From Macrostomum lignano (taxonomy: Eukaryota): DNA of 64,000 nt. Position 1 is the first letter of the stretch, and every line of letters starts with the position of its first letter. The notes beneath the pieces were generated by a model. The model was not told the origin of the DNA, searched no databases, and saw only the letters and a program-made list of their open reading frames with translations. Location: NCBI GenBank assembly GCA_002269645.1, contig NIVC01003280.1, positions 1 to 64,000 of the forward strand, written 5' to 3'. Below are positions 8,156 through 47,354 of the stretch, piece by piece. The position numbers and the translations under genes were made by a program.

Positions 8156-11100
8156 TCAGCCAGAATGCGACAGAATCATCCAGCTGATCACAAAATAGAA
8201 CAGGCACACCGGGTACACGGCCAGAGCTTTCCTATTGGGCGGTTGGCTGGATGCCAGAAACGCTGTAGAGGCAAACACGGACCAGGATAGGCCTAGCAGG
8301 ACCAGACAGCAGCGGACAATGAACAGCACCAGACTGCGGCTTGCCAGCAGAATTATTCGGCAACCAATTAGCGATAGAAGCAGAGGCAGTACGCAGTAGC
8401 CAAGTACGCAGATAGCCTGCGGTTTAGAGATGCAGTTGCGTGTGAGACACTGACACTATTAGTGGTATCCTTCCCTGACACTATTAGTGGTATCCTTCCC
8501 TGACACTATTAGTAGTATCCTTCCCTGACACTATTAGTGGTATCCTTCCCTGACACTATTAGTGGTATCCTTCCCTGACACTATTAGTGGTATCCTTCCC
8601 TGACACTATTAGTGGTATCCTTCCCTGACACTATTAGTGGTATCCTTCCCTGACACTATTAGTGGCATCTACCTGACACTGTTAATGGAATCTACCTGAC
8701 ACTATTAGTGGTATCCTTCCCTGACACTATTAGTGGTATCCTTCCCTGACACTATTAGTGGCATCTACCTGACACTGTTAATGGAATCTACCTGACACTA
8801 TTAGTGGTATCCTTCCCTGACACTATTAGTGGCATCTACCTGACACTGTTAATGGAATCTACCTGACACTATTAGTGGTATCCTTCCCTGACACTATTAG
8901 TGGTATCCTTCCCTGACACTATTAGTGGTATCCTTCCCTGACACTATTAGTGGTATCCTTCCCTGACACTATTAGTGGTATCCTTCCCTGACACTATTAG
9001 TGGTATCCTTCCCTGACACTATTAGTGGTATCCTTCCCTGACACTATTAGTGGTATCCTTCCCTGACACTATTAGTGGTATCCTTCCCTGACACTATTAG
9101 TGGCATCTACCTGACACTGTTAATGGAATCTACCTGACACTATTAGTGGTATCCTTCCCTGACACTATTAGTGGCATCTACCTGACACTGTTAATGGAAT
9201 CTACCTGACACTATTAGTGGTATCCTTCCCTGACACTATTAGTGGTATCCTTCCCTGACACTATTAGTGGCATCTACCTGACACTGTTAATGGAATCTAC
9301 CTGACACTATTAGTGGTATCCTTCCCTGACACTATTACTGGCATCTACCTGACACTGTTAATGGAATCTACCTGACACTATTAGTGGTATCCTTCCCTGA
9401 CACTATTAGTGGTATCCTTCCCTGACACTATTAGTGGTATCCTTCCCTGACACTATTAGTGGTATCCTTCCCTGACACTATTAGTGGTTTCCTTCCCTGA
9501 CACTATTAGTGGTTTCCTTCCCTGACACTATTAGTGGTTTCCTTCCCTGACACTATTAGTGGTTTCTTTCCCTGACACTATTAGTGGCATCTACCTGACA
9601 CTGTTAATGGAATCTACCTGACACTATTAGTGGTATCCTTCCCTGACACTATTACTGGCATCTACCTGACACTGTTAATGGAATCTACCTGACACTATTA
9701 GTGGTATCCTTCCCTGACACTATTAGTGGTATCCTTCCCTGACACTATTAGTGGTATCCTTCCCTGACACTATTAGTGGTTTCCTTCCCTGACACTATTA
9801 GTGGTTTCCTTCCCTGACACTATTAGTGGTTTCCTTCCCTGACACTATTAGTGGTTTCTTTCCCTGACACTATTAGTGGCATCTACCTGACACTGTTAAT
9901 GGAATCTACCTGACACTATTAATGACATCTACCTGACACTATTAATGGCATCTACCTGACACTATTAATGGAATCTACCTGACACTATTAGTGGCATCTA
10001 CCTGACACTATTAATGGAATCTAACTGACACTATTAGTGGCATCTACCTGACACTATTAATGGAATCTAACTGACACTGTTAATGGAATCTACCTGACAC
10101 TATTAGTGGCATCTACCTGACACTATTAATGGAATCTAACTGACACTGTTAGTGGCTTCTACCTGACACTATTAGTGGTTTCCTTCCCTGACACTATTAG
10201 TGGTTTCCTTCCCTGACACTATTAGTGGTTTCTTTCCCTGACACTATTAATGGCATCTACCTGACACTGTTAATGGAATCTACCTGACACTATTAATGAC
10301 ATCTACCTGACACTATTAATGGCATCTACCTGACACTATTAATGGAATCTACCTGACACTATTAGTGGCATCTACCTGACACTGTTAATGGAATCTACCT
10401 GACACTATTAGTGGCATCTACCTGACACTATTAATGGAATCTAACTGACACTATTAGTGGCATCTACCTGACACTGTTAATGGAATCTACCTGACACTAT
10501 TAGTGACATCTACCTGACACTATTAATGGAATCTACCTGACACTATTAATGGAATCTACCTGACACTGTTAATGGCATCTACCTGACACTATTACTGGCA
10601 TCTACCTGACACTATTAATGGCATATAACTGACACTATTAATGGTATCTACCTGACACTATTAATGGCATCTACCTGACACTGTTAATGGAATCTATCTG
10701 ACACTATTAGTGGTATCCTTCCCTGACACTATTAGTGGCATCTACCTGACACTGTTAATGGAATCTACCTGACACTATTAGTGGTATCCTTCCCTGACAC
10801 TATTAGTGGTATCCTTCCCTGACACTATTAGTGGTTTCCTTCCCTGACACTATTAGTGGTTTCCTTCCCTGACACTATTAGTGGTTTCTTTCCCTGACAC
10901 TATTAGTGGCATCTACCTGACACTGTTAATGACATCTACCTGACACTATTAATGGCATCTACCTGACACTATTAATGGAATCTACCTGACACTATTAGTG
11001 GTATCCTTCCCTGACACTATTAGTGGTATCCTTCCCTGACACTATTAGTGGTATCCTTCCCTGACACTATTAGTGGTTTCCTTCCCTGACACTATTAGTG

Positions 11101-14100
11101 GTTTCCTTCCCTGACACTATTAGTGGTTTCCTTCCCTGACACTATTAGTGGTTTCCTTCCCTGACACTATTAGTGGTATCCTTCCCTGACACTATTAGTG
11201 GTTTCCTTCCCTGACACTATTAGTGGCATCTACCTGACACTATTAATGACATCTACCTGACACTATTAATGGCATCTACCTGACACTATTAATGGAATCT
11301 ACCTGACACTATTAGTGGCATCTACCTGACACTATTAATGGAATCTAACTGACACTATTAGTGGCATCTACCTGACACTATTAATGGCATCTACCTGACA
11401 CTATTAGTGGCATCTACCTGACACTATTAGTGGCATCTACCTGACACTATTAATGGAATCTACCTGACACTATTAGTGGCATCTACCTGACACTATTAGT
11501 GGCATCTACCTGACACTATTAATGGCATCTACCTGACACTATTAGTGGCATCTACCTGACACTATTAGTGGCATCTACCTGACACTATTAATGGCATCTA
11601 CCTGACACTATTAGTGGCATCTACCTGACACTATTAGTGGCATCTACCTGACACTATTAATGACATCTACCTGACACTGTTAATGGAATCTACCTGACAC
11701 TATTAATGACATCTACCTGACACTATTAATGGCATCTACCTGACACTATTAATGGAATCTACCTGACACTATTAGTGGCATCTACCTGACACTATTAATG
11801 GAATCTAACTGACACTGTTAATGGAATCTACCTGACACTATTAATGGCATCTACCTGACATTCTACCTGATGTCATTAATGGAATCTACCTGACACTGTT
11901 AATGGAATCTACCTGACACTGTTAATGGAATCTACCTGACACTATTAGTGGCATCTACCTGACACTATTAATGGCATCTACCTGACACTATTAATGGAAT
12001 CTAACTGACACTATTAGTGGCATCTACCTGACACTGTTAATGGAATCTACCTGACACTATTAATGACATCTACCTGACACTATTAATGGCATCTACCTGA
12101 CACTATTAATGGAATCTACCTGACACTATTAGTGGCATCTACCTGACACTATTAATGGAATCTACCTGACACTATTAATGACATCTACCTGACACTATTA
12201 ATGGCATCTACCTGACACTATTAATGGAATCTACCTGACACTATTAGTGGCATCTACCTGACACTATTAATGGAATCTACCTGACACTATTAATGACATC
12301 TACCTGACACTATTAATGGCATCTACCTGACACTATTAATGGAATCTACCTGACACTGTTAATGGAATCTACCTGACACTATTAGTGGCATCTACCTGAC
12401 ACTATTAATGGAATCTAACTGACACTATTAGTGGCATCTACCTGACACTATTAATGGAATCTAACTGACACTATTAATGGCATCTACCTGACACTATTAA
12501 TGGAATCTACCTGACACTATTAATGGCATCTACCTGACACTATTAGTGGCATCTACCTGACACTATTAATGGTATCTACCTGACACTATTAATGACATCT
12601 ACCTGACACTACCAACAATACCTACAAGCATATAAAAAGAGTACCAGAGCAAGCTCACCTGAAAGAAAGAAATATCACCGCCAAGAAGCTTGGCATTAAG
12701 CGTGACAGCGCAGGCTCCAACCCAGAACACGATGAACACCTGAGCAAACTGCGGACCTCCGTCGTTTGATCCGGCACTGGAGTGGCCTTGCAACAGGCTG
12801 CAAGTGTGTTTGGCGAACCACAGTTACTAAAGTACTATGATAGTGAAATTTTGTTTGCAGAGGAAAAAACAATAGGATTAAAACTTACGTTGCCAAAAAG
12901 GTGCAAAGGATCAACGGGCCCCAGAGGTCCCCTGGAAATAAAATGGAACATTGATTAATGCAAAATTTTGCATTTTCATTATCATAGATGCAAATTTCTC
13001 GTGTCTCACATCTCGCATTTCATCTCCCGGACGTTACATTAACCCTCAACTGTAGTCTCACATGTTTACCTGGCACCTCAACTAACACCTCCCGTATCTA
13101 CCTGACACCTGAACTGACATCTCCCGTATCTACCTGACACCTGAACTGACATCTCCCGTACCTACCTGACACCTCAACTAACACCTCCCGTATCTACCTG
13201 ACACCTGAACTGACATCTCCCGTATCTACCTGACACCTCAACTAACACCTCCCGTATCTACCTGACACCTGAACTGACATCTCCCGTATCTACCTGACAC
13301 CTCAACTGACATCTCCCGTATCTACCTGGCACCTCAACTAACACCTCCCGTATCTACCTGACACCTGAACTTACATCTCCTGTATCTACCTGACACCTGA
13401 ACTGACACCTCCCGTATCTACCTGACACCTGAACTGACATCTCCCGTATCTACCTGGCACCTGAACTGACATCTCCGGTATCTACCTGACACCTGAACTG
13501 ACATCTCCCGTATCTACTTGACACCTGAACTGACATCTCCCGTATCTACCTGACACCTGAACTGACATCTCCCGTGTCTACCTGACACCTGAACTGACAT
13601 CTCCCGAGTCTACCTGATACCTCAACTACAGTCTCACATGTTTACCTGACACCTCGGCTGACATCTACCGTGTCTACCAGACACATGAACTGACATCTCC
13701 CGTATCTACCTGACACATAAACTGACATCTCCCGAGTCTACCTGATACCTCAACTACAGTCTCACATGTTTACCTGACACCTGAACTGACATCTCCCGTA
13801 TCTACCTGACACCTGAACTGACATCTCCCGTGTCTACCAGACACCTGAACTGACATCTCCCGAGTCTACCTGATACCTCAACTACAGTCTCACATGTTTA
13901 CCTGACACCTCGGCTGACATCTACCGTGTCTACCAGACACATGAACTGACATCTCCCGTATCTACCTGACACATAAACTGACATCTCCCGAGTCTACCTG
14001 ATACCTCAACTACAGTCTCACATGTTTACCTGACACCTGAACTGACATCTCCCGTATCTACCTGACACCTGAACTGACATCTCCCGTGTCTACCAGACAC

Positions 14101-14886
14101 CTGAACTGACATCTCCCGAGTCTACCTGATACCTCAACTACAGTCTCACATGTTTACCTGACACCTCGGCTGACATCTACCGTGTCTACCAGACACATGA
14201 ACTGACATCTCCCGTATCTACCTGACACATAAACTGACATCTCCCGAGTCTACCTGATACCTCAACTACAGTCTCACATGTTTACCTGACACCTGAACTG
14301 ACATCTCCCGTATCTACCTGACACCTCAACTGACATCTCCCGCGTCTGACACCTCAAATGCAGTCTCACATTTTTACCTGACACCTGAACTGACATCTCC
14401 CGTGTCTACCTCACTCCTCAACTAAGATCTCCCGAGTCTACCTGGCACCTGAACTGATATCTCCCGTGTCTACCAGACACATGAACTGACATCTCCCGAG
14501 TCTACCTGGCACCTGAACTGATATCTCCCGTGTCTACCAGACACATGAACTGACATCTCCCGTGTCTACCTGACACCTCAACTGACATCTCCTGTGTCTC
14601 TTAAGTACTTAGCGTTCTACATGAGATATTTACACTAGCCTCTAATTAATATTGTCACTATAAACCACAGCCTACAGCAACAAAAAGAATAAGAATCGAA
14701 AAAAAGCTCACAATCTCTCAGCAGAGATTTGCTCGATCTTGGAATGAACACATGATAGAACTTAACACCAACTGCTTTCACATCTCTCAGTATAGTATCC
14801 TTAACAGGCTCGTCCAGGGTTGATGGATACAAGTTAGAGCCATTCAGTGGCACATTTGGCACATTGCTGGGCCCAGAGTTGGACAT
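8156..14886 (-). CDS. YIPF6: YIP1 family member 6; exons 14886-14712, 12931-12889, 12797-12659, 8416-8156; the original exon extends past a transposon insertion to ~18123
   Basis: STLDEPVKDTILRDVKAVGVKF...LLRD|WDLWGPLILCTFLAT|LLQ...DGGPQFAQVF...LNAKLLGGDISFFQ|AICVLGYCVLP...ASTAFLASSQPPNRKALAVYPVCLFYFVISWMIL. All GT-AG junctions are phase-consistent. The 43-nt and 261-nt exons are absent from the ORF track. Confidence 0.95.
8451..12610. repeat. 4.2-kb intronic minisatellite of interspersed 25-bp (CTGACACTATTAGTGGTATCCTTCC) and 23-bp (CTGACACTATTAGTGGCATCTAC / CTGACACTGTTAATGGAATCTAC) variants
   Basis: Fills YIPF6 intron 8417-12658. Confidence 0.97.
13055..14600. repeat. Intronic minisatellite, ~32-bp unit CTACCTGACACCTGAACTGACATCTCCCGTAT with higher-order variants
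   Basis: Fills YIPF6 intron 12932-14711; shares the CTACCTGACAC core with the 8451-12610 array. Confidence 0.95.
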
Positions 14887-14905
14887 ATCACCTTCTAATG
14901 GTGCC

Positions 14906-17900
14906 CACGGTTAGGCTGGGCACTGATATTGAGGAAAAAATTGCCACAAGACGGCACCTATGTGCCATCAAACTACTGCCTTTCTGCAGTTCGGAAAGCC
15001 CACTCATCAAAATTCATGTGCCTATCTTTGCTGTGTATGGCACTATATGTTTCGGTACACTTTAAAACAAAATATTTTATTGCTCTAATAGAATTTTTGC
15101 TAATCAGATGATAATTATGAATAGACCACAAAGGACTTTGGGAGTAAATATTGCCCCATATCTGCTTGAGCAATAAAACGCTGCACCACAGGTAGCTTAT
15201 GCCTTATAATTGCAGTCATAAAGAGGAATTTATCAATAGTAATAACACAGTAGTATCTTATCTATAATTGCTTTGTAATATTTCTGCCAGGTGCGTTAAC
15301 TTGGTTATCATACTGCTCAATTTACTTATAAAGGTTTGATCTAGTTCTATTTGATCTAAAACAAGCGAGTGCCTGAACTGAAAGAGCTGTTTGCATAGCT
15401 TGTACTGTCTACAATGCCAACGACAAAAAAAACTCATAACGAGAACAGGCAAAGTTTGTGCCTGCTCTGCTTGAGACGAGCTTCTGCGCTGATTTCTTCT
15501 TGCTCTAATTTCGAATCCGTGGCAGCCGACTTGTTCCAGGACTACGAGGCAGTGCGGCACTTTCTACCTGAAGGAGTTTGCCAGGGCTGCAGGCGCGTTT
15601 TATCGTCACTAAGAAGTCTGACGCCTCGTGCTCTGCCACCGCGACCAGATTACGAGAAGATAATAGCCGACATGAAGAGTCTGCCTCCAGCCACCAGAAG
15701 CAGACCGGATTGCAACTGCCAACTGTGCGAAATGGCTCGTGGCAATCACCACAAAGGCAGCGATCCAAAGACGCCTTACACAACAGGTCCTGCTCGAGCC
15801 CCACCTGGTCGACCACGCGAAAGATCCCCAGCACCAGCTGAAGGAGCAACGGCTGTGCTTTCCTGCTCATACTGTCATTCTCCAGTTGGGCGTGGCAAAC
15901 AGCACAAATGCAACTCGACAGCTAAGGTGACTAACATCGAGCAAACAGTCAGCCCAAGGACAAGGGAGATGCTGGCCAGCAACTGCATTGCCGAAAAGAC
16001 GGGTGGGTCGACGGCGGATTCGAATTCGATCACTCTGGCCAGACATCGAGGCGGCCATCCGATTCGAGTTGCTGTGCATGTTGCTCAAAACAGCAGTGCG
16101 AGCTTTCCTCCAACGAGGACGGACACTATGATGCACTTGAAAACAACTCTGAATCTGAGCAACAATCAAGTGCTACAGGCTGCTCAAGTGCTTCGTGCTG
16201 GCGCGAGCTCATCTCGTGCAGTCGAGTCAAACTTGAAGAAAATTTTGGTACAGCAAAATCGAGCATTAGAGGATTACTTCGACATCCAGAATCTCCAGTT
16301 CTCGGAGCTGACCTCGACTGCCGCAACAGCCGACACTATTTGCCGCCCGACTGTTGTCTGCAACGACTCGGTCAAACTCATTGCACATGTTGCTCAGCAA
16401 CGCAGTTTCAATGATTTTCACTGTCTGCTGGGTCTCGATGGTGGCGGCGGATTTTTTAAAGTTTGCGTTTCGATAATTGGCTCTAACGCAAAACCCGAAA
16501 TCGGAACTCGAGGAGCCAACAGCAGGAAATTCTGTGACACGGGTGTCAAGAAGATCCTGTTGCTTGCGATCGTCAACGACGTTCCTGAGACTTACGGAAA
16601 TATTCAGGCTCTGCTAGAGGCGATCGCTGTCAACGAACTTCAAATCCCAGTCACTGCAGATATGAAAGTTGCAAACATCATCTGCGGACTGCAACCTCAT
16701 TCCTGTACACATCCGTGCCCCTATTGCGAAGCTCTGGCTCCTCTTACAGAAAATGGTGTGCCAAGAACTCTTGGGAGAATTCGGCAGTTTGCTCAGCAGT
16801 TTCAAGCAGCTGGCCAAGTTCGTGCAAAGGCAAAGAACTTTAAAAACTGTGTCAACATGCCACTGCTACCAGGCGATGATGACAAAGAAGTTTTGATGCT
16901 TCTGCCGCCACCTGAGCTGCACCTGCTCCTTGGAGTCAGCAACCGACTGCTGGACAAGCTCAACGAAGCTTGGGGTGCGAATCGCGCGTTCGAGTGGGCT
17001 CATCAGCATGGCATTATTCGAGCTGATTACAGAGGTGGCATGATGGAAGGAAACGCCTGCCGCCAGCTGCTCCGCAAATCACCGCAGCTTCACGCTGATC
17101 TGCCTCCACCATTACAGCCGTACGGGGCGTGTCTGATGGCGTTCGATCGGCTGGTCAGCAGCGCCTTTGGAACCGAATTGGCGGCAGACTTTGAAGAGGC
17201 AATTGAGAATTTTCGACTGGCCTACATGAGCTTAAGCTTACCTGTCACCCCAAAAGTTCACGTTGTCTTTTGCCATGTTGGAGAGTTCTGCCGGCGGACA
17301 GGGCAAGCGCTTGGCAGCTGCAGCGAGCAAGCAGTGGAGAGTGTTCACTCTGATTTTGCCAAAACGTGGTCACGGTACAGCCTGCCAGCGCACCATGCTG
17401 AGTTTGGCCAAAATCTTTTGCGCGCCGTGGTTGCTTACAACAGCCACCACATTTAATCCCGGTAACTCGGTTTTCTGCTTTACTGGTAAAAGAAATGGCA
17501 GTGGTTGTTAGTCTTACAGTAAAGTAGTATTCAAAGGACCCTATAAATTTAAAATACTAAAATTTTTGCAAGCTCCCGTACTGTAGAAAGCTTTCATACT
17601 TTTGCTACTTTATATGCTAATACGAGCGTACCTTGCAATATTATTGCAGAAATGCATGTAGTTCTGGTTAATATTTGAGGAACTTGCTACACAAAAAGAA
17701 TATAGTTATTTCGAAATTTTTCTATAAAACCCATGCTGTTTCTGAGTATTTAAATGTAAACAATTTGTAATGTTAGAAATCGTAAAATTATTTAACTTAC
17801 TAACTTACAAGCTAGTTAACAAGTAAAACAAGCAATAATACTACACAAACATTAACCTAAATAAACTTCTTGTAATCTTGTACTCTTTTTTGTACAAGTA

Positions 17901-18111
17901 TACATTAAGTCTGTCACTTGCTAAAAATTTCTGCTTGTCTTATTAACGAGAGCAATTAATGAGAGCAATTGTACACAGATTGTACACAAAGATAGGCACA
18001 TGAATTTTAATGAGTGGGCTTTCCGAACTACAGAAAGGCAGTAGTTTAATGGTACACAGGTGCCATCTTGTGGCAATTTCCTCCCCAATATCAGTGCCCA
18101 GCCTAACCGTG
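14906..18111 (+). mobile_element. Full-length Chapaev-type (CMC superfamily) DNA transposon, 3206 bp
   Basis: 125-bp imperfect TIRs (14906-15030 and 17987-18111) starting CACGGTTAGG and ending CCTAACCGTG; 4-bp TSD TGCC at 14902-14905 and 18112-18115; one long ORF. Confidence 0.88.
15414..17456 (+). CDS. Intact 680-aa DDE transposase with an N-terminal Chapa/RAG1-like zinc finger
   Basis: H-x7-C-x2-C-x32-P-x3-C-x2-C finger, then CNCQLC; core motifs GLDGGGGFFKV, VTADMKVANIICGL...CPYC, PELHLLLG, MEGNACRQLL, TPKVHVVFCH, SEQAVESVH. Confidence 0.9.
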   Translation: MPTTKKTHNENRQSLCLLCLRRASALISSCSNFESVAADLFQDYEAVRHFLPEGVCQGCRRVLSSLRSLTPRALPPRPDYEKIIADMKSLPPATRSRPDCNCQLCEMARGNHHKGSDPKTPYTTGPARAPPGRPRERSPAPAEGATAVLSCSYCHSPVGRGKQHKCNSTAKVTNIEQTVSPRTREMLASNCIAEKTGGSTADSNSITLARHRGGHPIRVAVHVAQNSSASFPPTRTDTMMHLKTTLNLSNNQVLQAAQVLRAGASSSRAVESNLKKILVQQNRALEDYFDIQNLQFSELTSTAATADTICRPTVVCNDSVKLIAHVAQQRSFNDFHCLLGLDGGGGFFKVCVSIIGSNAKPEIGTRGANSRKFCDTGVKKILLLAIVNDVPETYGNIQALLEAIAVNELQIPVTADMKVANIICGLQPHSCTHPCPYCEALAPLTENGVPRTLGRIRQFAQQFQAAGQVRAKAKNFKNCVNMPLLPGDDDKEVLMLLPPPELHLLLGVSNRLLDKLNEAWGANRAFEWAHQHGIIRADYRGGMMEGNACRQLLRKSPQLHADLPPPLQPYGACLMAFDRLVSSAFGTELAADFEEAIENFRLAYMSLSLPVTPKVHVVFCHVGEFCRRTGQALGSCSEQAVESVHSDFAKTWSRYSLPAHHAEFGQNLLRAVVAYNSHHI

Positions 18112-18884
18112 TGCCGCTGATGCCTGTGTGGTGGCGTGGAGGCAGTGCACAAAGATTTATCTAAAAATATGGCTTCAGATATTGAAAGATATTGATGCAG
18201 ATACAGTTATGATTTCCCAAATCTAGTTTGAACTTTTAAAATTAGCATGGTCTATTCAAAAAGATGACCCTATAGAAATTTTATGACAGTATTTGTCTGC
18301 TGGATCGACTCACATTAAAATTTACAATCCTTTATTTACACACAGGTTTTTATGATTGCTGGTCTATAATCTAAGTATAAAATATAATTTCAGTAGTACA
18401 TGGGAGAAACTATTAATCTTTATAGATAATTTATCCACCTGACCAAAAATATTTGTCCTTTCAAAAACAATAAGTGTGCCAGTTGTGCCACAAGTATGCC
18501 CTTTGACAGAGTTATAACTATCTTTGTATGTGATATTTGGCACACTTTGCACAATTGTACCAGTTGTGCCATAGCTATGCCATTTGGCACAGTTGTAAAT
18601 GTCTTTGTCTGTCCTTTTTGGTATACTTGGCACAAATAATTTTATTATTGCTAATTACACAACGAAACCAACTGGCACACTTGGCATACTTGCTAAAATT
18701 GTACTAGTGGTGCCACAGCTATGCCGTTTGGCACAGTTATAAGTCTTTGTATATCTTTATTGTCAAAGTTAATAGCAGGGGATTCTCACATAGGAGTGAG
18801 ATATTATACATGAAAAAATGAATCTATTAGAACATCATAACTCTTTAAAGTAATCGTAAGACTATATTACTAGTTCTTTTTTAT

Positions 18885-19100
18885 TGACAAAATGTCTTTT
18901 GTAAAAGATTTCTCAGATCTAGGAAATGTATTGTGAAAATGGTATGTCTTTTGTAAAAGATTTCTTAGATCCAGGAAATGTATTATGAAAATGGTATGTC
19001 TTTTGTAAAAGATTTCTCAGATCCAGGAAATGTATTGTGAAGATAGTATGTCTTTTGTAAAAGATTTCTCAGATCCAGGAAATGTGTTGTGAAAATTGTA
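18885..19100. repeat. About 4 tandem copies of a ~55-bp unit (ATGTCTTTTGTAAAAGATTTCTCAGATCCAGGAAATGTATTGTGAAAATGGT)
   Basis: Direct inspection. Confidence 0.8.
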
Positions 19101-20616
19101 TGTCATATATTATGTTACAGGTAGGTGTTTGTCATATTGTATGTATATTTCTAAGAAGTATGGCCCCTTTTAAAATGTTTGTTTTGCATATAATATATGT
19201 AATATAAAATAGTATAAGGTTTAGGTTTAGTTGATGATAGCTGAATATCTGAATGTATGTATAGAGAGCTTGTTCCTGTGTAAATGCAATATATGTTCAT
19301 ATCTAATACAAAATAGGTTTATGCTTATCATCTCTATGTTCAGTTGATAAATTTTAATGACAAATGGATAAATATTATTTTATTATAAATATACAATTGT
19401 ATACAATAGTTTATTTTTGAAAATTTTAAGTCTTATTGAGTTGTTTATTAATTTGCATTTTGTTGAATAGCTAATTATGATATTATATTAGAATGTTAGC
19501 ATATTCAGACATATTAGGCCTAAGACTCCTAAGTTACAAAGTATAAATGGCAGAATGCTAATCTTTCTAATATATCAATATATACTAATAGTATATGAGG
19601 GCATCTTCATATTATTAGGGCATCTTTTGTCCTCATTTTAAATTCATTATTAATAGAAAATGTACAAAACTTACACTTGGTGAGTCATGAAACTCCATGA
19701 CAAATTGTTTATTGTCTGTAGCCATCTTTACCTTTTTGACAGACAAGATAGGCCTACCTTTAAATGTTAGACCTACTAGTAAATGTCAAATATGTGTGCA
19801 CTACTACTATGTCTTCTTTTCTTATGCCTTAAGCTTAACACTTATCTTCAGGGCAATGCTATTATTTAGCGAGTAGGTACTAGACAAAATTTTAACTGTA
19901 TATAATATGAATGCGACAATAATCAGCTGGCTGCTAGCTGTTACGATTTACAAACACCAAGTAAGGCCCTACCAACAATATATACTTGCCTAGTTCTTCA
20001 CAATCTCAAATATCATCTACTATGTCTTCTGAATTAAAATATACCAGAAGTCCAGAATAGAATTCTACCTGACAATTATGATGAGCAGCGGCGGCGGGGG
20101 CCGATTCAACGAACTCGTAATATAAAGTTTGAATTTGAACCAGATTTTTTAGAAAAATATAGTATTTTAAACAAATAGCTACTAGCGAACTTTTTAAAAT
20201 GAACAAATATGTTTTGTTGAATTTTTGATGTACAATTTTTCTCTTTACTTTGCATACTTTTTCTACGTGGTTTTAACATTTGGGTTTCAACGGCGCGACA
20301 TTATATGATTCGATTATTCAATTATGCCAATGGCATAATAAATGGAATAATACTCCTTTAGAAAAAGTCAGAACTTGTTAATGTCTAAAATACAACGCTC
20401 TATAAAAACAGCAGAGCAATGAGATAGTTAGAGCAATATGTGCAACCCTAAAAATATGCCCCTAAAAAGTGTCAGGAATTAGTGTCAGCGCATCACCGAG
20501 CAATTAGCAAGAGGACGAAGATCAATCCCAGTAGCAGTGCCCAGTGCCTCGGCGTCACAAAGCAGACCAGTCCAACGTGTCCGCTCCCCCCTTCCGTCTG
20601 AGCGGATCTACCGTCT

Positions 20617-21880
20617 GAGGGTTGTCTGGCGAAATATAGGACTAATGTGCTCATAATTGCTCATTTCTATTCATGTATATCATGACAATTCATACTGTAC
20701 TAGAAAGTGCAACTAATTAGTCTATGACTAAAGCCTCTGCTTAAAAACTAAAGGTCATATTCTACCCCTAATGAAACTTCTTGATCTGAGAAAATGGTTC
20801 AACAGCGAGATGTCGCGTTATCGTCATCTTTATCTTAAAAACTAAGTCGTTATCGATTGCTACAAAGCTGGAAAGTCTGCGATAGAGTGTCTTCGCCACC
20901 TGCAGGCAATCTACCAGGATGATGCCTTGTCTAGAAGCTAGGTCTATTACATCTATGACCAACTGCGCTCTGGCCACGACGGTTCGGTTCTGATGGACGT
21001 GGAAAGAACAAGGACCCGACTGTCAGGACCCCAGCAAAAATTGAGATTGTTGCTCGTCTGATTGAGGACAGGCGCCTCACTGTTAGGGAGCTCTCAGATA
21101 AATCTGGGATTCCCAAGACAACTATTCATGAGATTCTTGTCCATGACCTGCAGTCAAGCATGTGTCTGCCAGGTGGGTGCCTTACCTGCTCACGGAAGAA
21201 AACCGCAGGGAGTGCACACACTGTGCTCAGGACTTCTTTTGCATGAGCCGGGCTTTCAGCAGCAAATAATAACTGCTGATGAAACATGGCTTTACTACGT
21301 GACTCCGGAAACCAAGAACCAATCTAAGCAGTGGGTGCCAATGGTTGCCAATGCCCCGACAAAGGCCCGGGTGTCCCGCAGTGCCGTGACTCGCAGGGCC
21401 TTGCCTACACGTAGAGCAGGGCCAGACAGTCAACGCATACTTGACACTCTGAGGGACCACATTCGACGCAAGCGGCCAGAATGGATGGCAAGAACCAGGT
21501 TCACTGTTCTGCATGACAATGCCCGTCCACACACGTGTCAGCCCACACCAGGGAGTTTCTTACCAGGAGAGGCATTCCGGTGGTGCCGCATCCAACCTAC
21601 TCACCTGATTTGGCCCCTGGCTGCGGACTTCTGGCTATTTCCGCATGTCAAAAACTGCATTGCCGGTTGCCGGTTCGACACCTTGCTGGAGCTTTTGACA
21701 CCAACCCCATGGCTGCTTCCCAGTGCACTGAGGCCTTCAACAAGTGGCTGTTAGGGATGGCAGCGGTGCATTGAGAAGGATGGAGATTATGTTGAAAAAT
21801 GACAGTTATTGTTTCGTTTCAATTGTTTGTTTAAAATCGTATATGGCACCTGCTGTCCTATATTTCGCCGGACAACCCTC
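20617..21880 (+). mobile_element. Decayed mariner (DD34D-type) element with a frameshifted transposase pseudogene
   Basis: 26-bp TIRs at 20617-20642 and 21855-21880 (1 mismatch); fragments CYKAGKSAIECLRHLQAIYQDDALSR, DRRLTVREL, ITADETWLYYVTPETKNQSKQW, VLHDNARPH, HPTYSPDLAP, RCIEKDGDYVEK; no intact TA TSD. Confidence 0.9.
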
Positions 21881-22796: not shown

Positions 22797-25700
22797 ATGC
22801 CGTTGGTATTACGTGTTGTTATGCCACTGTTGCTGTGTGCATTGTGCTCCGACTGCCTGCCGGCTAGCAACAGCATGTACAGCCATCAGTCTGCGGACTG
22901 TGCCAGTGCCGACTTGGTGAGATGCTCGACATATTTTATCTATATTTGCGCGTATAAAACTATTCATGAAATTGGAAAAAATGATCAGCTGGTTCTACCA
23001 TAGATCCATAGATATCACTGGTTACATACATGTAGTGTTTGAGGTTAAAGAGGTTAAAGCAATATGTTGGAAGATACACTCCTCACTCCGTCACTCCCTC
23101 ACTCCGTCACTGCCGCACTCCGTCACTGCCTCACTCCGTCACTGCCTCACTCCGTCACTGCCTCACTCCGTCACTGCCTCACTCCGTCCCTGCCTCACTC
23201 CGTCACTCCCTCACTCCGTCACTGCCTCACTCCGTCACTGCCTCACTCCGTCCCTGCCTCACTCCGTCACTCCCTCACTCCGTCACTGCCGCACTCCGTC
23301 ACTGCCTCACTCCGTCACTGCCTCACTCCGTCACTGCCTCACTCCCTCACTCCGTCACTGCCTCACTCCGTCACTCCCTCACTCCGTCACTGCCGCACTC
23401 CGTCACTGCCTCACTCCGTCACTGCCTCATTCCCTCTCTCCGTCACTCCGTCCCTCAGTCATTCCGTCACTCCCCCAACCCGTCACTTCCTCACCCTGTC
23501 ACTCAGTCACTCCTTCATTCCCGCAAACTGTCACTGCCGAATATTGCTATAGCAAGACACAATCCCGAATGCAACTGCCCTGAGGCCTCGCATTGGTACT
23601 AAAAAAATATCCCAGAGCCGATTCTGGACTTCTCTGTTGGCGTACGAGGCTTAATTTTAATTGTCGTTACGCTAAAAACTTCGAAAATTACAGTTATTAA
23701 TTTAGCCTATCTTGATCTTTTTCTTTCGCTATATAAATTAGTTCGCTTCAATATACGCTCGCAGCAGTACAGTAGTCCTAGATGGTAGAAGCTTCATGCA
23801 GCTGTCATTCAATCATCGTCATTATAGTGCAGCAACATGTCATGGTCGCTAAAAAGTTTATCTACAGTAGTTGACTACAAAATTTCGTTAGCAGAAAACA
23901 GCTCGCGATTCAACTTAGTGGCTAAGCACTAAACACTGGGGGAGGGGGGTTCGGTCTTGTGTTTCCCACGTTCGGGCGAGCTGTGCCTGACAAAGAAGGC
24001 ATTATTTTATTCGGTGCAACAAACAAATGCATGTAAATGAAGACAAGGAACTGAGGAGGATATTTGGCGTCAGCCTGTCCCGCCGCCTCTCATCCCAGCA
24101 AAGATCCCAAGCAGAGATAGATTTCCCAATTGTCCCCACTCGCAACCAAGGGCTCCGGTTTTGTAGCTTCATGGACTGCTAATAAGGTACAATATGGATC
24201 GGAGGTCACTAGAGCAATTTTTGGGAACCATTCACAATGTATGAGTATTGAGTAAGTAAATAGGCAATGAATGGGATACTTTACAGCATTATAAATTATG
24301 TTTAGTAAGTAACTACTTTCACAACCCATGGACAAATAGAAGCTTAAAAATGCAGAAATTTCTCAGATTAAATAGTAGATTGTGTCTGTGGTTTTGGAGG
24401 CAGACAATGGTAGATTGTGTCGATGGTTTTGGAGGCAGACAATGGTAGATTGTGTCTATGGTTTTGGAGACAGACAATGGTAGATTGTGTCTATGGTTTT
24501 GGAGACAGACAATGGTAGATTGTGTCGATGGTTTTGGAGACAGACAATGGTAGATTGTGTCTATGGTTTTGGAGACAGACAATGGTAGATTGTGTCGATG
24601 GTTTTGGAGGCAGACAATGGTAGATTGTGTCTATGGTTTTGGAGACAGACAATGGTAGATTGTGTCTATGGTTTTGGAGACAGACAATGGTAGATTGTGT
24701 CTATGGTTTTGGAGACAGACAATGGTAGATTGTGTCTATGGTTTTGAGGCAGACAATGGTAGATTGTGTCTATGGTTTTGAGGCAGGCAATGGTAGATTG
24801 TGTCTATGGTTTTTGAGGCAGACAATGGTAGATTGTGTCTATGGTTTTGGAGACAGATAATGGTAGATTGTGTCTATGGTTTTGGAGACAGACAATGGTA
24901 GATTGTGTCTATGGTTTTGGAGGCAGACAATGGTAGATTGTGTCTATGGTTTTGGAGACAGACAATGGTAGATTGTGTCTATGGTTTTGAGGCAGGCAAT
25001 GGTAGATTGTGTCTATGGTTTTTGAGGCAGACAATGGTAGATTGTGTCTATGGTTTTGGAGACAGACAATGGTAGATTGTGTCTATGGTTTTGAGGCAGA
25101 CAATGGTAGATTGTGTCTATGGTTTTGGAGGCAGACAATGGTAGATTGTGTCTATGGTTTTTGAGGCAGACAATGGTAGATTGTGTCTATGGTTTTGGAG
25201 ACAGATAATGGTAGATTGTGTCTATGGTTTTGAGGCAGACAATGGTAGATTGTGTCTATGGTTTTGGAGGCAGACAATGGTAGATTGTGTCTATGGTTTT
25301 GGAGACAGACAATGGTAGATTGTGTCTATGGTTTTGAGGCAGACAATGGTATATTGTGTCTATGGTTTTGAGGCAGACAATGGTAGATTGTGTCTATGGT
25401 TTTGGAGGCAGACAATGGTAGATTGTGTCTATGGTTTTGGAGTCAGGCAATGGTAGATTGTGTCTATGGTTTTTGAGTCAGACAATGGTAGATTGTGTCT
25501 ATGGTTTTGGAGTCAGACAATGGTAGATTGTGTCTATGGTTTTGGAGTCAGACAATGGTAGATTGTGTCTATGGTTTTGGAGACAGACAATGGTAGATTG
25601 TGTCTATGGTTTTGGAGTCAGACAATGGTAGATTGTGTCTATGGTTTTGGAGACAGACAATGGTAGATTGTGTCTATGGTTTTGAGGCAGACAATGGTAG

Positions 25701-28700
25701 ATTGTGTCTATGGTTTTGAGGCAGACAATGGTAGATTGTGTCTATGGTTTTGGAGGCAGACAATGGTAGATTGTGTCTATGGTTTTGGAGTCAGACAATG
25801 GTAGATTGTGTCTATGGTTTTGGAGACAGACAATGGTAGATTGTGTCTATGGTTTTGGAGTCAGGCAATGGTAGATTGTGTCTATGGTTTTTGAGGCAGA
25901 CAATGGTAGATTGTGTCTATGGTTTTGGAGACAGACAAGGATTGATATTTCACGAGTAGAGAGAAGCCACTAATCTTGTCTATGACAAAACCATATACAC
26001 AAGCACATTGTCTCATGAATGTTGCGTTGAATAATGAGCCTAGATCCTAAGACAATGATCCATGCATGACAACATAAAATAAGTAATGAGTTGCTTTTTC
26101 TCAAAATTAAATATTAAATTAAATTCTACTAATATCCACCTTATTGTACCTGGTACATTGTTGACTGTTGCCTCCAGTCCAGATGCTTTGCGCCAGGAGT
26201 CCATGCTTCCTTTCCCACCGGACCGGATCCGGATATGACACTAATACTGCAGCAAAGCACACCCCATGTTATATTTCATATATAGTAAGCGAAGCCCTCA
26301 AAGTCTGTCTGTAAGCAGATTTTGAGACTAGTCTGAGAATTGATATTTAAAGAAGAATTAGTGCGACGATTACATTAGAAAGGGGCCGGTGTGTCTGACC
26401 CCCCCCCACCTTGACAAGCATGACAAGACAAATTAACAACATGTAGTCATGCCAGTCCTAGAGCAGACAGGGTGGAAGCGAGAGCAGAATCTGAGAAATG
26501 CTTAATACTCGCACAGTTTATATGGTGACGGTTGTTAAACAGTGAGGCAGTAAAATGAGTAATTTTGTACCGTAAAATCAATATCAAATTTTCATAAACT
26601 ATAAATTATCACAGACCTGAAATATCACAGACCTGAAATATCACAAACCTGAAATATCACAAACCTGAAATATCACAAACCTGAAATATCACAGACCTGA
26701 AATATCACAAACCTGAAATATCACAAACCTGAAATATCACAAACCTGAAATATCACAGACCTGAAATATCACAGACCTGAAATATCACAAACCTGAAATA
26801 TCACAAACCTGAAATATCACAAACCCGAAATATCACAAACCTGAAATATCACAAACCCGAAATATCACAAACCTGAAATATCACAAACCGGAAATATCAC
26901 GGACCTGAAATATCACAGACCTGAAATATCACAGACCTGAAATATCACAAACCTGAAATATCACAGACCTGAAATATCACAAACCCGAAATATCACAAAC
27001 CTGAAATATCACAAACCCGAAATATCACAGACCTGAAATATCACAGACCTGAAATATCACAAACCTGAAATATCACAGACCTGAAATATCACAGACCTGA
27101 AATATCACAAACCTGAAATATCACAGACCTGAAATATCACAAACCCGAAATATCACAGACCTGAAATATCACAAACCTGAAATATCACAGACCTGAATAT
27201 CACAGACCTGAAATATCACAGACCTGAAATATCACAAACCTGAAATATCACAAACCCGAAATATCACAGACCTGAAATATCACAGACCTGAAATATCACA
27301 GACCTGAAATATCACAAACCCGAAATATCACAGACCTGAAATATCACAGACCTGAAATATCACAGACCTGAAATATCACAAACCTGAAATATCACAAACC
27401 CGAAATATCACAAACCCGAAATATCACAAACCCGAAACATCTCAAACCCGAAATGCGAGCTATCATAACTCCGAAAAGCAAAATACCGTTGGGTGTTGCT
27501 GGAACTTTCGGAGTTATTTGAGCAAAAGACTGAAAAAAACAGAGCGAAAACACATATCAGCCACGTGTTGCATCGCAAGTTTTCCATTCTGAAGCAACTA
27601 CAATCTCTTTCTTGCACCCACATGCCACTGTCCCGGAAAAGATCGACAGTTATGGCGTGTTCTGCGCGTTATTTTGCATCACGTGCTCTAACTTAAAAGA
27701 AAGGTAAAAGTAAATTATGCTGCAGATTTTATGCTGCTGATTAAACAACAGATCAAACTCCGGTGTAAACTGCAGTTGACTCTTTAAGCACAGCACAGAT
27801 TTCATCGATTAGATCTGCTCCTACACAAACCTCAGCAGCGAACGGAAATGAATTCACGACAGATGCCCTAACCCCCAACCTTGCTCTCCTTCAGACCCAG
27901 CACGGGCTTGGCACAGTGTCCAGGCACGCGGAAATGTGCAGCGAAATGCCTGGTAAGCCAGCGCGATTTCAATAACATGATTTTTTGTATTGAGGGTCAA
28001 ATTTGTTAAAGGGAAAGTGGCTGGGGGTAGCCAGCAGCAGCACTTCAATGCGTTAATCCAGGTTTTAAGCATCGGATTATGCCTGACTTTATCGATAAGC
28101 TCGATCTAAAAGTAATCTAGGCAAGGGTCAGCACTCTCCACAGCTTCACTGTATAACTGCTCAGAGCCAGCTGCTCAAATGCACAGCTCGAATGCACAGC
28201 TCAAAGGCACAGCTCAAAAGCACTCTCTCACAGCCTCCCTGTACAACTGCTCAGAGCCTGCTGCTCAAATGCACTCTCCCACAGCCTCCCTGTACAACTG
28301 CTCAGAGCCAGCTGCTCAAATGCACTCTCCCACAGCCTCCCTGTACAACTGCTCAGAGCCAGCTGCTCAAATGCACTCTCCCACAGCCTCTCTGTACAAC
28401 TGCTCAGAGCCAGCTGCTCAAATGCACTCTCCCACAGCCTCCCTGTACAACCGCTCAGAGCCAGCTGCTCAAATGCACTCTCCCACAGCCTCTCTGTACA
28501 GCTGCTCAGAGCCAGCTGCTCAAATGCACTCTCCCACAGCCTCCCTGTACAACTGCTCAGAGCCAGCTGCTCAAATGCACTCTCCCACAGCCTCTCTGTA
28601 CAACTGCTCAGAGCCAGCTGCTCAAATGCACTCTCCCACAGCCTCCCTGTACAACCGCTCAGAGCCAGCTGCTCAAATGCACTCTCCCACAGCCTCTCTG

Positions 28701-30953: not shown

Positions 30954-32229
30954 AAGAAAGGTAAAAGTAAATTATGCTGCAGATTTTATGCTGCTGATTA
31001 AACAACAGATCAAACTCCGGTGTAAACTGCAGTTGACTCTTTAAGCACAGCACAGATTTCATCGATTAGATCTGCTCCTACACAAACCTCAGCAGCGAAC
31101 GGAAATGAATTCACGACAGATGCCCTAACCCCCAACCTTGCTCTCCTTCAGACCCAGCACGGGCTTGGCACAGTGTCCAGGCACGCGGAAATGTGCAGCG
31201 AAATGCCTGGTAAGCCAGCGCGATTTCAATAACATGATTTTTTGTATTGAGGGTCAAATTTGTTAAAGGGAAAGTGGCTGGGGTAGCCAGCAGCAGCACT
31301 TCAATGCGTTAATCCAGGTTTTAAGCATCGGATTATGCCTGACTTTATCGATAAGCTCGATCTAAAAGTAATCTAGGCAAGGGTCAGCACTCTCCACAGC
31401 TTCACTGTATAACTGCTCAGAGCCAGCTGCTCAAATGCACAGCTCGAATGCACAGCTCAAAGGCACAGCTCAAAAGCACTCTCTCACAGCCTCCCTGTAC
31501 AACTGCTCAGAGCCTGCTGCTCAAATGCACTCTCCCACAGCCTCCCTGTACAACTGCTCAGAGCCAGCTGCTCAAATGCACTCTCCCACAGCCTCCCTGT
31601 ACAACTGCTCAGAGCCAGCTGCTCAAATGCACTCTCCCACAGCCTCTCTGTACAACTGCTCAGAGCCAGCTGCTCAAATGCACTCTCCCACAGCCTCCCT
31701 GTACAACCGCTCAGAGCCAGCTGCTCAAATGCACTCTCCCACAGCCTCTCTGTACAGCTGCTCAGAGCCAGCTGCTCAAATGCACTCTCCCACAGCCTCC
31801 CTGTACAACTGCTCAGAGCCAGCTGCTCAAATGCACTCTCCCACAGCCTCTCTGTACAACTGCTCAGAGCCAGCTGCTCAAATGCACTCTCCCACAGCCT
31901 CCCTGTACAACCGCTCAGAGCCAGCTGCTCAAATGCACTCTCCCACAGCCTCTCTGTACAGCTGCTCAGAGCCAGCTGCTCAAATGCACTCTCCCACAGC
32001 CTCCCTGTACAACTGCTCAGAGCCAGCTGCTCAAATGCACTCTCCCACAGCCTCCCTGTACAACCGCTCAGAGCCAGCTGCTCAAATGCACTCTCCCACA
32101 GCCTCTCTGTACAGCTGCTCAGAGCCAGCTGCTCAAATGCACTCTCCCACAGCCTCCCTGTACAACTGCTCAGAGCCAGCTGCTCAAATGCACTCTCCCA
32201 CAGCCTCCCTGTACAACTACAGCGTGCAG

Positions 32230-40574: not shown

Positions 40575-45365
<4,791 letters not shown>

Positions 45366-46905: not shown

Positions 46906-47354
46906 ACACATCGAAATTTTCAAAGAAATCGACACTCAAATCGGCAAAAATTCCGCCACGGAGCAGCGGAGCATGGCAAAAAAATAACAAAGAACACTTG
47001 CTCTCCTACCGAAAATATTTTAATTGTATTGTTTTATATCAAACCAAATATATATTATACACTTAACGAATGCTGTGATGTAAAAAAACAAAATACTTTT
47101 ATATTTTTTATTTAAAGTTAAAAAGAACGTTACGGCGACAGTTCTCTATTTATGACAGTATAAATGAGTCAAATGACAGCTAGTGTGAGTGACAGCTATA
47201 ATGTCCGTGTATTGATAGCATCGCTAAAATAACGTGCAAGCCCATAAAGGTGTAAGACGTAATCATCATTCATACGTTAGCTTTTAGTTATGTTTAATAG
47301 CTGTCTACGACAGGCGATTGAATAAGGAGAAAAGACTGAGAAACATGAGGGAGA

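What the first reader, a model, noticed from the sequence alone, without database searches (positions are those of the whole stretch)
14902..18123. Intact Chapaev transposon inserted inside a YIPF6 exon, just upstream of an in-frame ATG
Removing 14906-18111 and one TGCC copy rejoins, on the minus strand, ...CACACAG|GCA TCA GCG GCA CCA TTA GAA GGT GAT ATG TCC (ASAAPLEGDM-SNSG). PLEGD resembles the PVEGE motif of YIPF6 N-termini, and a plausible acceptor lies at 18124/18123. The element therefore splits the exon 12 nt in. The remaining ATG at 14886 could still give a nearly complete YIP1 domain, with transcripts starting in or spliced from the TIR. The uninterrupted 680-aa ORF and perfect TSD suggest a recent, possibly active and polymorphic insertion; the ~9 TIR mismatches may be intrinsic asymmetry.
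Basis: partly seen in the sequence, partly recalled or inferred. Interest (0 to 1): 0.7.

Follow-up and report, generated by a model that had tools for sequence, protein, structure and literature searches.

The report
Chapaev transposon splitting a YIPF6 exon
A complete RAG1-like "Chapaev" jumping gene sits inside the second coding exon of one of three assembled copies of the Golgi gene YIPF6 in the flatworm Macrostomum lignano, and the other two copies keep the untouched target site, so this is a real and recent but ordinary transposon insertion.

Summary
A 3206-bp element (14906-18111) has 125-nt inverted ends with 9 mismatches, CAC...GTG termini, a perfect 4-bp TGCC duplication and an intact 680-aa ORF. 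The window is Macrostomum lignano Mlig_3_7, contig NIVC01000105.1.

Two other contigs of the same assembly carry the same YIPF6 gene with the exact empty site, and their annotated 231-aa protein reads ...SPS|ASAAPLEGDMSNSG. Exon 1 (19725-19675) and the acceptor at 18124/18123 are present in the window. The element lies 12 nt into exon 2, between codons 21 and 22, one codon before an LEGD motif whose E and G are invariant in 16 animal YIPF6 proteins.

The transposase has the Chapaev hallmarks: DDE, C(2)C, LH and H(4)H. Its only PDB matches by profile, and its 11 significant matches by fold, are RAG1 and Transib. A sister family in the same genome has five copies, four with perfect 4-bp duplications.

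Read-through gives a stop after 23 codons, so this copy is probably a null allele covered by the other two copies. That step, and the rescue from ATG 14886, are untested. It is a new member of a known kind, of moderate interest.

The parts
14902..14905 (.). Target-site duplication, copy 1 (TGCC on the + strand)
   Evidence: The empty sites in L002 and L003 hold a single GGCA on the gene strand.
14906..18111 (+). Full-length autonomous Chapaev-type DNA transposon, 3206 bp. It is antisense to the host gene.
   Evidence: Colinearity with L002 and L003 breaks exactly at 14905 and at 18111/18112.
14906..15030 (+). Left terminal inverted repeat, starting CACGGTTAGGCTGG
   Evidence: 125 nt with 9 mismatches to the right arm, and the first 26 nt identical. 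The terminal 14-mer and an A-rich block at about nt 30-40 are conserved in a sister family.
15414..17456 (+). Transposase ORF, 680 aa, single exon. It has an N-terminal Cys/His-rich region and a RAG1-like DDE core: D342, D416, E638/E642; C435-x2-C438; L502-H503; H616-x4-H621.
17987..18111 (-). Right terminal inverted repeat, ending CCAGCCTAACCGTG
18112..18115 (.). Target-site duplication, copy 2 (TGCC)
19675..19725 (-). YIPF6 exon 1 coding part (MATDNKQFVMEFHDSPS), followed by donor GTAAGT
   Evidence: identical to exon 1 of the annotated gene in L002 and L003.
18124..19674 (-). YIPF6 intron 1, ending in the acceptor CACACAG
   Evidence: It holds a 52-bp tandem repeat.
18112..18123 (-). First 12 nt of YIPF6 exon 2 (GCATCAGCGGCA = ASAA), cut off from the rest by the element
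14712..14905 (-). Rest of YIPF6 exon 2, including a TSD copy. It encodes PLEGDMSNSG...SLLRD and ends at donor GTGAGC. The in-frame ATG (Met27) is at 14886-14884.
12889..12931 (-). YIPF6 exon 3 ((W)DLWGPLILCTFLA)
12659..12797 (-). YIPF6 exon 4 (LLQGHSS...ISFFQ)
8156..8416 (-). YIPF6 exon 5 coding part with the stop codon (AICVLGYC...ILSHSG*)
   Evidence: Exon lengths 51+202+43+139+261 = 696 nt = 231 codons plus stop, which matches P0012.

Best explanation
The element is a full-length, autonomous cut-and-paste DNA transposon of the Chapaev type (CMC / Transib-related, with a RAG1-like DDE transposase).

It has integrated in antisense orientation into coding exon 2 of one of the three assembled copies of YIPF6 in Macrostomum lignano, between codons 21 and 22, and duplicated the 4-bp target TGCC (shown). 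The insertion is younger than the divergence of the three gene copies, because two copies keep the exact, footprint-free empty site within nearly identical flanks (shown).

With the native acceptor at 18124 still in place, a transcript that runs into the element reads MATDNKQFVMEFHDSPSASAAHG-stop. This copy is therefore most likely a null or strongly reduced allele, and its loss is tolerated because the neopolyploid genome holds two intact copies encoding an identical protein (inferred).

The element itself looks competent to transpose (inferred). Its ORF is intact and keeps every residue that is invariant in a 59-sequence family alignment. Its outer 26 bp are identical at both ends. A sister family has five copies that encode identical proteins.
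For: - Structure and TSD.
- Origin of the window: M. lignano Mlig_3_7, NIVC01000105.1.
- Empty sites: L002 (NIVC01001724.1) and L003 (NIVC01001003.1) hold the contiguous 33-mer. Colinearity breaks exactly at 14905 and at 18111/18112.
- Flank identity: with the element removed, the window differs from L002 by 1 substitution and one 52-bp repeat unit in 2491 bp, and from L003 by 3 substitutions. There is no difference within about 185 bp upstream or 306 bp downstream of the site. There is 1 mismatch in the 2294 bp downstream versus L002.
- Host gene: the annotated protein P0012 (231 aa, Yip1 domain) contains ASAAPLEGDM. Exon 1 is present in the window, and the downstream exons and splice sites are intact.
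- Read-through stop.
- Three subgenomes (S, L1, L2) in this assembly: PMC10733133.
- Chapaev hallmarks as listed in PMC4079192: a 4-bp TSD here and in 4 of 5 sister copies, with one mismatch in the fifth; CAC/GTG termini; D342, D416, E638/E642, C435, C438 and H503 invariant, and L502, H616 and H621 at least 90% conserved, in 59 relatives.
- Relation to RAG1: the only PDB sequence matches of the family profile are amphioxus RAG1L (E = 1.6e-4) and RAG1, aligned over the second D, C(2)C and H(4)H. All 11 significant fold matches are RAG1 or HzTransib.
Against: - There are no RNA data, so the fate of transcripts from this copy is inference.
- The inverted repeats differ at 9 of 125 positions, against 1-2% in the sister family. 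That could mean weakened ends, although the terminal 26 nt are perfect.
- Only one exact copy of this transposase is on record in the assembly, so recent multiplication of this particular family is not shown.
- I could not decide whether the three loci are subgenome copies or uncollapsed haplotypes.
- The structural model is of medium quality (mean pLDDT 64) and the N-terminal 280 residues are poorly modelled.
Confidence: 0.85

Rival explanations
1. The interrupted copy still makes working YIPF6. Either the element is removed from the pre-mRNA as an intron, using the GT inside the terminal CACG|GTTAGG and an AG just downstream in the host exon, or translation starts at Met27 (ATG 14886) on transcripts that begin in or are spliced near the TIR.
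For: An exhaustive GT...AG enumeration found exactly two in-frame, stop-free ways to remove the element. Both use the donor in the TIR terminus. One gives ...ASAAHEGDMSNSG and keeps the invariant E and G. Exons 3-5 and all their splice sites are intact. From my own knowledge, maize Ds and dSpm elements in exons are known to be spliced out through sites in their termini.
Against: - The donor GTTAG departs from the M. lignano consensus GT[G/A]AG (PMC8629364). The acceptors TTAG|A and GAAG|G lack a pyrimidine tract.
- By my reading of the sequence, the better-looking acceptors inside the TIR (TTTTTTCCTCAATATCAG and CCCAG) give a stop or a frameshift when joined to exon 1 or to that donor.
- A Met27 start would drop 26 residues, including the invariant EG, and lies behind exon-1 AUGs.
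- No gene besides the transposase ORF is on record within 4 kb of the element in this contig, whereas the two empty copies are annotated.
Confidence: 0.12
2. The element is a dead relic, no longer mobile, that happens to keep an open frame. The 7% divergence between its arms reflects decay.
For: There are 9 mismatches in 125 nt of TIR, compared with 98-99% arm identity in the sister family. Three of the mismatches fall in or next to the A-rich block that is conserved between families. Only one exact copy is on record.
Against: - An element decaying in place long enough to gain 7% arm divergence should not keep a 2043-nt ORF with all family-invariant residues.
- Nor should it sit in flanks that differ by only 0.04-0.12% from the empty paralogues.
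- The arm asymmetry was therefore most likely inherited from the donor copy.
- Gene models P0003 and P0005 carry 94.6-98.4% identical transposase segments fused to genes that are not in this window. Other copies therefore exist elsewhere.
Confidence: 0.2
3. The insertion is an assembly artefact, such as a chimeric long read or a mis-join, and no chromosome carries it.
For: PMC10733133 reports that 36% of the Mlig_3_7 assembly length lies in scaffolds that are chimeric between subgenomes.
Against: The junctions are exact to the base at the element's own termini and carry a perfect 4-bp duplication of the target. That is the signature of transposition, not of a mis-join.
Confidence: 0.03

Closest known systems
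Chapaev DNA transposons (Kapitonov & Jurka 2007; placed in the CMC group by Yuan & Wessler 2011; hallmarks as summarised in PMC4079192)
   Same: 4-bp TSD, CAC...GTG termini, a single transposase with DDE plus the C(2)C, LH and H(4)H motifs, and a Cys-rich N-terminal region.
   Different: I found no Chapaev element of M. lignano described in the papers searched. Its TIRs are long (125 nt) and visibly asymmetric. It is not of the Chapaev3 subgroup, which makes 3-bp TWA duplications.
Transib transposases and RAG1 / ProtoRAG RAG1L (PDB 6pqn, 4wwx, 6dbo, 6b40)
   Same: They are the best, and the only significant, sequence-profile and fold matches. The second catalytic D, the C-x2-C pair, the H-x4-H pair and the region of the catalytic E align. 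Kapitonov & Koonin 2015 (PMC4411706) place Chapaev as a clade of the Transib superfamily.
   Different: From my own knowledge, Transib and RAG-like transposons make 5-bp duplications; this element makes 4-bp ones. Identity to RAG1 is only 10-14%. There is no RAG2-like second gene; the element has room for one ORF only.
Exon insertions of maize Ds / dSpm (CACTA) elements that are partly spliced out of the mRNA (from my own knowledge)
   Same: A cut-and-paste element of the same wider group sits inside a coding exon, with GT and AG dinucleotides at or next to its termini that could in principle restore the frame.
   Different: No transcript evidence exists here, and the candidate sites are weak.

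Membership tests
Chapaev (CMC / Transib-related DNA transposons) | Target-site duplication of 3-4 bp (4 bp for Chapaev proper) | tested here: met
   TGCC/TGCC here. The sister family shows atct, ttgc, aacc and ctcg as perfect duplications, and tata/aata with one mismatch. The empty sites hold one copy.
Chapaev (CMC / Transib-related DNA transposons) | Terminal inverted repeats with invariable 5'-CAC ... GTG-3' ends | tested here: met
   CACGGTTAGG...CCTAACCGTG. The termini are the same in the sister family.
Chapaev (CMC / Transib-related DNA transposons) | DDE catalytic triad in the transposase | tested here: met
   D342, D416 and E638/E642 are invariant in 59 relatives of 25-57% identity. D416 and the region of the catalytic E align with the corresponding parts of RAG1. 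Which of the two E residues is catalytic is inferred.
Chapaev (CMC / Transib-related DNA transposons) | C(2)C, LH and H(4)H motifs | tested here: met
   C435-PY-C438, L502-H503 and H616-VVFC-H621. C435, C438 and H503 are invariant; L502, H616 and H621 are at least 90% conserved. The motif list comes from PMC4079192.
Chapaev (CMC / Transib-related DNA transposons) | N-terminal 'Chapa' complex zinc-finger domain | tested here: inconclusive
   A conserved Cys/His pattern is present: H8, C16, C19, C56, C59, C100, C102, C105, C151, C154, H164, C166. No reference Chapa profile or structure was available for comparison, and this part of the model has pLDDT below 50.
Chapaev (CMC / Transib-related DNA transposons) | Clusters with reference (Repbase) Chapaev transposases in a phylogeny | not testable with these tools
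   No Repbase sequences are on hand. Indirect support: the only PDB relatives are RAG1 and Transib.
Transib proper | 5-bp target-site duplication | tested here: not met
   4 bp in 5 of 6 insertions examined, and 4 bp with one mismatch in the sixth. No 5-bp reading of the junction fits.
CACTA / En-Spm | CACTA termini, 3-bp TSD, Transposase_21-type domain | tested here: not met
   The termini are CACGG and the TSD is 4 bp. There is no Pfam hit at E <= 1 other than a chance-level Radical_SAM match.
YIPF6 (Yip1 domain family member 6), host gene | Yip1 domain and orthology to annotated YIPF6 | tested here: met
   The paralogue protein P0012 is identical over the 214 residues assembled from the window's rejoined exons 2-5, and exon 1 (17 codons) is base-identical. 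P0012 carries PF04893. The best non-Macrostomum hits are all annotated YIPF6 or YIPF6-like at 56-66% identity. The N-terminal LEGD motif is shared.

The most novel reading that the evidence does not exclude
The element is a currently active Chapaev transposon. To my knowledge no Chapaev transposon has been shown to move in an experiment, so it would be the first. Its ends are built like recombination signals: a CACGGTT 'heptamer', a 22-23-nt spacer, then a conserved A-rich block. Its terminal GT may also let the host splice it out of YIPF6 mRNA, leaving ...ASAAHEGDM... with the invariant EG motif intact.
Probability: 0.1. Interest if true: 0.6.

Novelty: new member of a known kind. Interest (0 to 1): 0.35.

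Why it matters
This is a clean natural example of a RAG1-related cut-and-paste element caught soon after integration. The filled site and two exact empty sites sit in one genome assembly, which fixes the target duplication at 4 bp and defines the element's ends to the base.

An intact Chapaev transposase with defined ends is a reasonable candidate for a transposition assay. Such an assay would add a third experimentally tractable branch, beside Transib and ProtoRAG, for studying how the RAG recombinase arose. It could also serve as an endogenous tool, or a caveat, for transgenesis in M. lignano, which is a regeneration model.

For the host, the case illustrates how a young polyploid can absorb a knock-out of one copy of a conserved Golgi gene. 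None of this is unexpected for a repeat-rich neopolyploid genome.

Tried and rejected
1. Spliced-leader idea. I considered that 18124/18123 was a trans-splice acceptor and that the M. lignano spliced leader, which ends in ATG (PMC8629364), supplied the start codon in frame (M-ASAAPLEGD...). I rejected this because an ordinary exon 1 with donor GTAAGT lies 1.55 kb upstream and is part of the annotated gene in the paralogues.
2. 5'-UTR insertion. I considered that ATG 14886 was the native start and that the element sat in the 5' UTR. The same evidence, plus the invariant EG motif upstream of Met27, rejects this.
3. Pfam scan of the transposase: nothing meaningful. Single-sequence search of PDB: nothing. 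Only the 59-sequence profile reached RAG1.
4. Exact look-up of the 83-aa ORF from ATG 14886: not on record.
5. Homology search with exon 2 alone: one 98-aa fragment from an unnamed ENA contig. The full-length query was needed to find the paralogues.
6. Acceptors inside the TIR joined to exon 1 or to the TIR donor give a stop or a frameshift (my reading of the sequence). Skipping exon 2 (202 nt) shifts the frame.
7. I could not assign the three loci to subgenomes S, L1 and L2.
Full report
**The observation**

- The element runs from CACGGTTAGG at 14906 to CCTAACCGTG at 18111, which is 3206 bp.
- TGCC lies directly outside each end, at 14902-14905 and 18112-18115.
- The arms form a 125-nt inverted repeat with 9 mismatches, and the outermost 26 nt are identical.
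- That 26-mer occurs only at these two places in the 64-kb window, against none in 100 shuffles.
- Between the arms lies one long ORF, 15414-17456 on the + strand, of 680 aa. There is no room for a second gene.

**Origin of the window**

The ORF's exact product is on record once, on contig NIVC01000105.1 of GCA_002269645.1. That is the Mlig_3_7 assembly of the flatworm Macrostomum lignano.

**The host gene**

A YIPF6 orthologue lies on the minus strand. Its parts in the window are:

| Part | Coordinates | Notes |
|---|---|---|
| Exon 1 | 19725-19675 | MATDNKQFVMEFHDSPS, donor GTAAGT |
| Intron 1 | 19674-18124 | acceptor CACACAG |
| Exon 2, first part | 18123-18112 | 12 nt, before the element |
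| Exon 2, second part | 14905-14712 | after the element |
| Exon 3 | 12931-12889 | |
| Exon 4 | 12797-12659 | |
| Exon 5 | 8416-8156 | includes the stop codon |

All splice sites are canonical. They fit the M. lignano consensus GT[G/A]AG and CAG reported in PMC8629364. The exon lengths add up to 231 codons plus a stop.

**The empty site**

A search with the protein assembled from the rejoined exon 2 and exons 3-5 returned an annotated M. lignano protein, BOX15_Mlig002884g1 (P0012, 231 aa, Yip1 domain). It is 100% identical over the whole query and reads MATDNKQFVMEFHDSPS-ASAAPLEGDM-SNSG....

It is encoded on two other contigs of the same assembly: NIVC01001724.1 (L002) and NIVC01001003.1 (L003). 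Both hold the uninterrupted CACACAG|GCATCAGCGGCACCATTAGAAGGTGATATGTCC. Colinearity with the window breaks exactly at 14905 and at 18111/18112, with the 4-bp target present once.

With the element and one TGCC removed, 2491 bp around the site were compared.
- Against L002 there is one substitution and one 52-bp repeat unit.
- Against L003 there are three substitutions.
- Nothing differs within about 185 bp upstream or 306 bp downstream of the site.

The exonic status of 18112-18123 rests on the annotated model of the paralogues and on an identical exon 1 in the window.

**Why three copies**

PMC10733133 reports that the Mlig_3_7 assembly of the inbred DV1 line holds three genetically isolated subgenomes (S, L1, L2). 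It gives typical SNP divergence of about 1.9-2.4% and negligible heterozygosity within a subgenome.

Three YIPF6 loci with conserved neighbours fit that picture. A 288-aa gene and an ABI gene lie downstream in both L002 and L003, and the window is colinear with them. I could not tell which locus belongs to which subgenome. I also could not exclude that two of them are uncollapsed haplotypes. This locus is more uniform than the genome average, apart from its tandem arrays.

**What the insertion does to the gene**

The element lies between codon 21 (GCA) and codon 22 (CCA). That is one codon before L-E-G-D. E24 and G25 are invariant in an alignment of 16 YIPF6 proteins from cnidarians, molluscs, annelids, insects and vertebrates.

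The native acceptor is untouched. A transcript spliced from exon 1 therefore reads ASAA, then HG, then a stop inside the TIR.

I listed every GT...AG pair that would remove the element and keep an open frame.
- There are only two. Both use the GT within the terminal CACG|GTTAGG and an AG in the host exon.
- One yields ASAAHEGDM.
- The donor departs from the species consensus, and neither acceptor has a pyrimidine tract.
- The more convincing acceptors inside the TIR give a stop or a frameshift (my reading of the sequence).
- Skipping exon 2 (202 nt) shifts the frame.

A start at Met27 (ATG 14886) would lose the invariant EG and lies behind the exon-1 AUGs. No gene besides the transposase ORF is on record within 4 kb of the element on this contig, whereas both empty copies are annotated.

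My best reading is that this copy is a null or near-null allele, buffered by two copies that encode the identical protein. This step is inference, because no transcript data were available.

**What the element is**

Pfam gives nothing for the ORF, and a single-sequence search of PDB gives nothing. The family is nevertheless large. A profile of eight relatives finds 8449 protein clusters at E <= 0.001 and 1245 at E <= 1e-30.

In 59 relatives of 25-57% identity, these positions are invariant or at least 90% conserved:
- D342, in GLDGGGG;
- D416;
- C435 and C438, the C(2)C pair;
- L502-H503, the LH motif;
- H616 and H621, the H(4)H pair;
- E638 and E642;
- a series of N-terminal Cys/His residues.

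These are the DDE, C(2)C, LH and H(4)H motifs that PMC4079192 lists as characteristic of Chapaev, together with a 3-4-bp TSD and invariable CAC...GTG ends.

The 59-sequence profile hits only four PDB sequences. They are amphioxus RAG1L (6b40, E = 1.6e-4) and three RAG1 sequences (E = 0.008-0.024). The alignment runs over the second D, the C-x2-C, the H-x4-H and the region of the catalytic E.

An AlphaFold model has mean pLDDT 64. The core, residues 280-680, is mostly at 70-97, and the N-terminus is poor. Its 11 significant PDB fold matches are all RAG1 or Helicoverpa Transib transposase (probability 1.00, TM 0.24-0.52). Hermes is next, at E = 2e-3.

This agrees with Kapitonov & Koonin 2015 (PMC4411706), who place Chapaev as a clade of the Transib superfamily with an N-terminal 'Chapa' zinc-finger domain. 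I could not test the Chapa domain against a reference, and I could not build a tree with Repbase sequences.

**A sister family fixes the TSD rule**

P0002 is 56% identical to the transposase and is also 680 aa. It is encoded by five loci on five contigs.
- Each element is 3457 bp with about 227-nt arms that are 98-99% identical.
- The termini are CACGGTTGGGCTGG...CCGTG.
- The 4-bp duplications are atct, ttgc, aacc, ctcg and tata/aata, the last with one mismatch.

Four base pairs is therefore the rule. This separates these elements from Transib (5 bp), CACTA (3 bp) and Chapaev3 (TWA).

Between the two families, the terminal 14 nt and an A-rich block at about nt 30-40 of the arm are conserved, and the rest is not.

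**Age and activity**

The insertion is younger than the divergence of the three loci.
- Precise loss from two copies is unlikely, because both empty sites are perfect.
- Decay in place cannot explain the 7% arm divergence, given the intact ORF and the nearly identical flanks. The asymmetry was therefore probably inherited.
- Gene models P0003 and P0005 contain 98.4% and 94.6% identical transposase segments fused to a peptidase M16 and a ubiquitin-conjugating enzyme. Neither gene is in this window. Other copies of this family therefore exist elsewhere in the genome.

Current mobility is plausible but not shown.

**Novelty**

In the searched literature, only one paper mentions both M. lignano and Chapaev, and it is about Tc1/mariner elements. 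The element is a new member of a known kind. The insertion is an ordinary, if unusually well documented, event in a repeat-rich neopolyploid.

Noticed in passing
window 8450-12611 and 13056-14599: Two YIPF6 introns are filled with large minisatellite arrays: a 23-nt unit over about 4.2 kb (about 180 copies; TRF rows report periods of 23, 46 and 69), and a 32-nt unit in about 48 copies. These arrays account for most of the divergence between the three gene copies.
   Followed up: partly
window 18892-19104: A 52-nt tandem repeat of 4.1 copies lies in YIPF6 intron 1. L002 has one unit fewer, and this is the only length difference near the insertion site.
   Followed up: yes
window 14906-14946, 18071-18111; L004 2417-2460: The arms of both Chapaev families share a bipartite layout: a conserved terminal CACGGTT(A/G)GGCTGG, about 22-23 nt of less conserved spacer counted from the 7th base, then a conserved (T)AAAAAA(T/A)TGCC block. 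This recalls the heptamer, 23-nt spacer and nonamer layout of recombination signals and Transib ends. In the window element the A-run is degraded on the right arm only (GGAGGAAATTGCC). The resemblance is recalled from memory and was not tested.
   Followed up: partly
L004-L008 (NIVC01000157.1, NIVC01000566.1, NIVC01001036.1, NIVC01002395.1, NIVC01000040.1): A sister Chapaev family has five 3457-bp copies that encode identical 680-aa proteins, which points to recent amplification in M. lignano. The copy in L007 lies about 200 bp upstream of a cytochrome P450 gene model.
   Followed up: partly
P0003, P0005 (not in the window): Database gene models fuse part of this transposase to a peptidase M16 or to a ubiquitin-conjugating enzyme. 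This suggests other copies inside or beside genes, or chimeric transcripts or gene models.
   Followed up: partly
window 21062-21754 (+) and 41654-42343 (+): These ORFs look like mariner/Tc1-type transposase remnants, with motifs such as 'DETW' and 'HDNARPH' in the first. The first lies about 1.3 kb upstream of YIPF6 exon 1, inside a stretch that aligns with both empty-site loci at 99.3-99.5%. The identification is by eye only.
   Followed up: no
window 28179-29549 and 31435-32805: A tandem segmental duplication with a period of 3256 bp contains identical 456-aa ORFs and identical 51-nt arrays. Both copies match a single stretch of L003.
   Followed up: no
window 38410-40457, 24371-25938, 45554-46906, 50535-51850 and others: The window is densely packed with minisatellite arrays: TRF reports 48 rows (some overlapping) with score >= 200. 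They include a strongly strand-biased 23-nt CT-rich array with GC skew of -0.88.
   Followed up: no
P0011 (ENA contig, 602 bp): A 98-aa YIPF6 N-terminal fragment comes from an unnamed ENA assembly. It is 51% identical to exon 2 and carries VLEGQ in place of PLEGD, and it was the only hit when exon 2 alone was searched.
   Followed up: no
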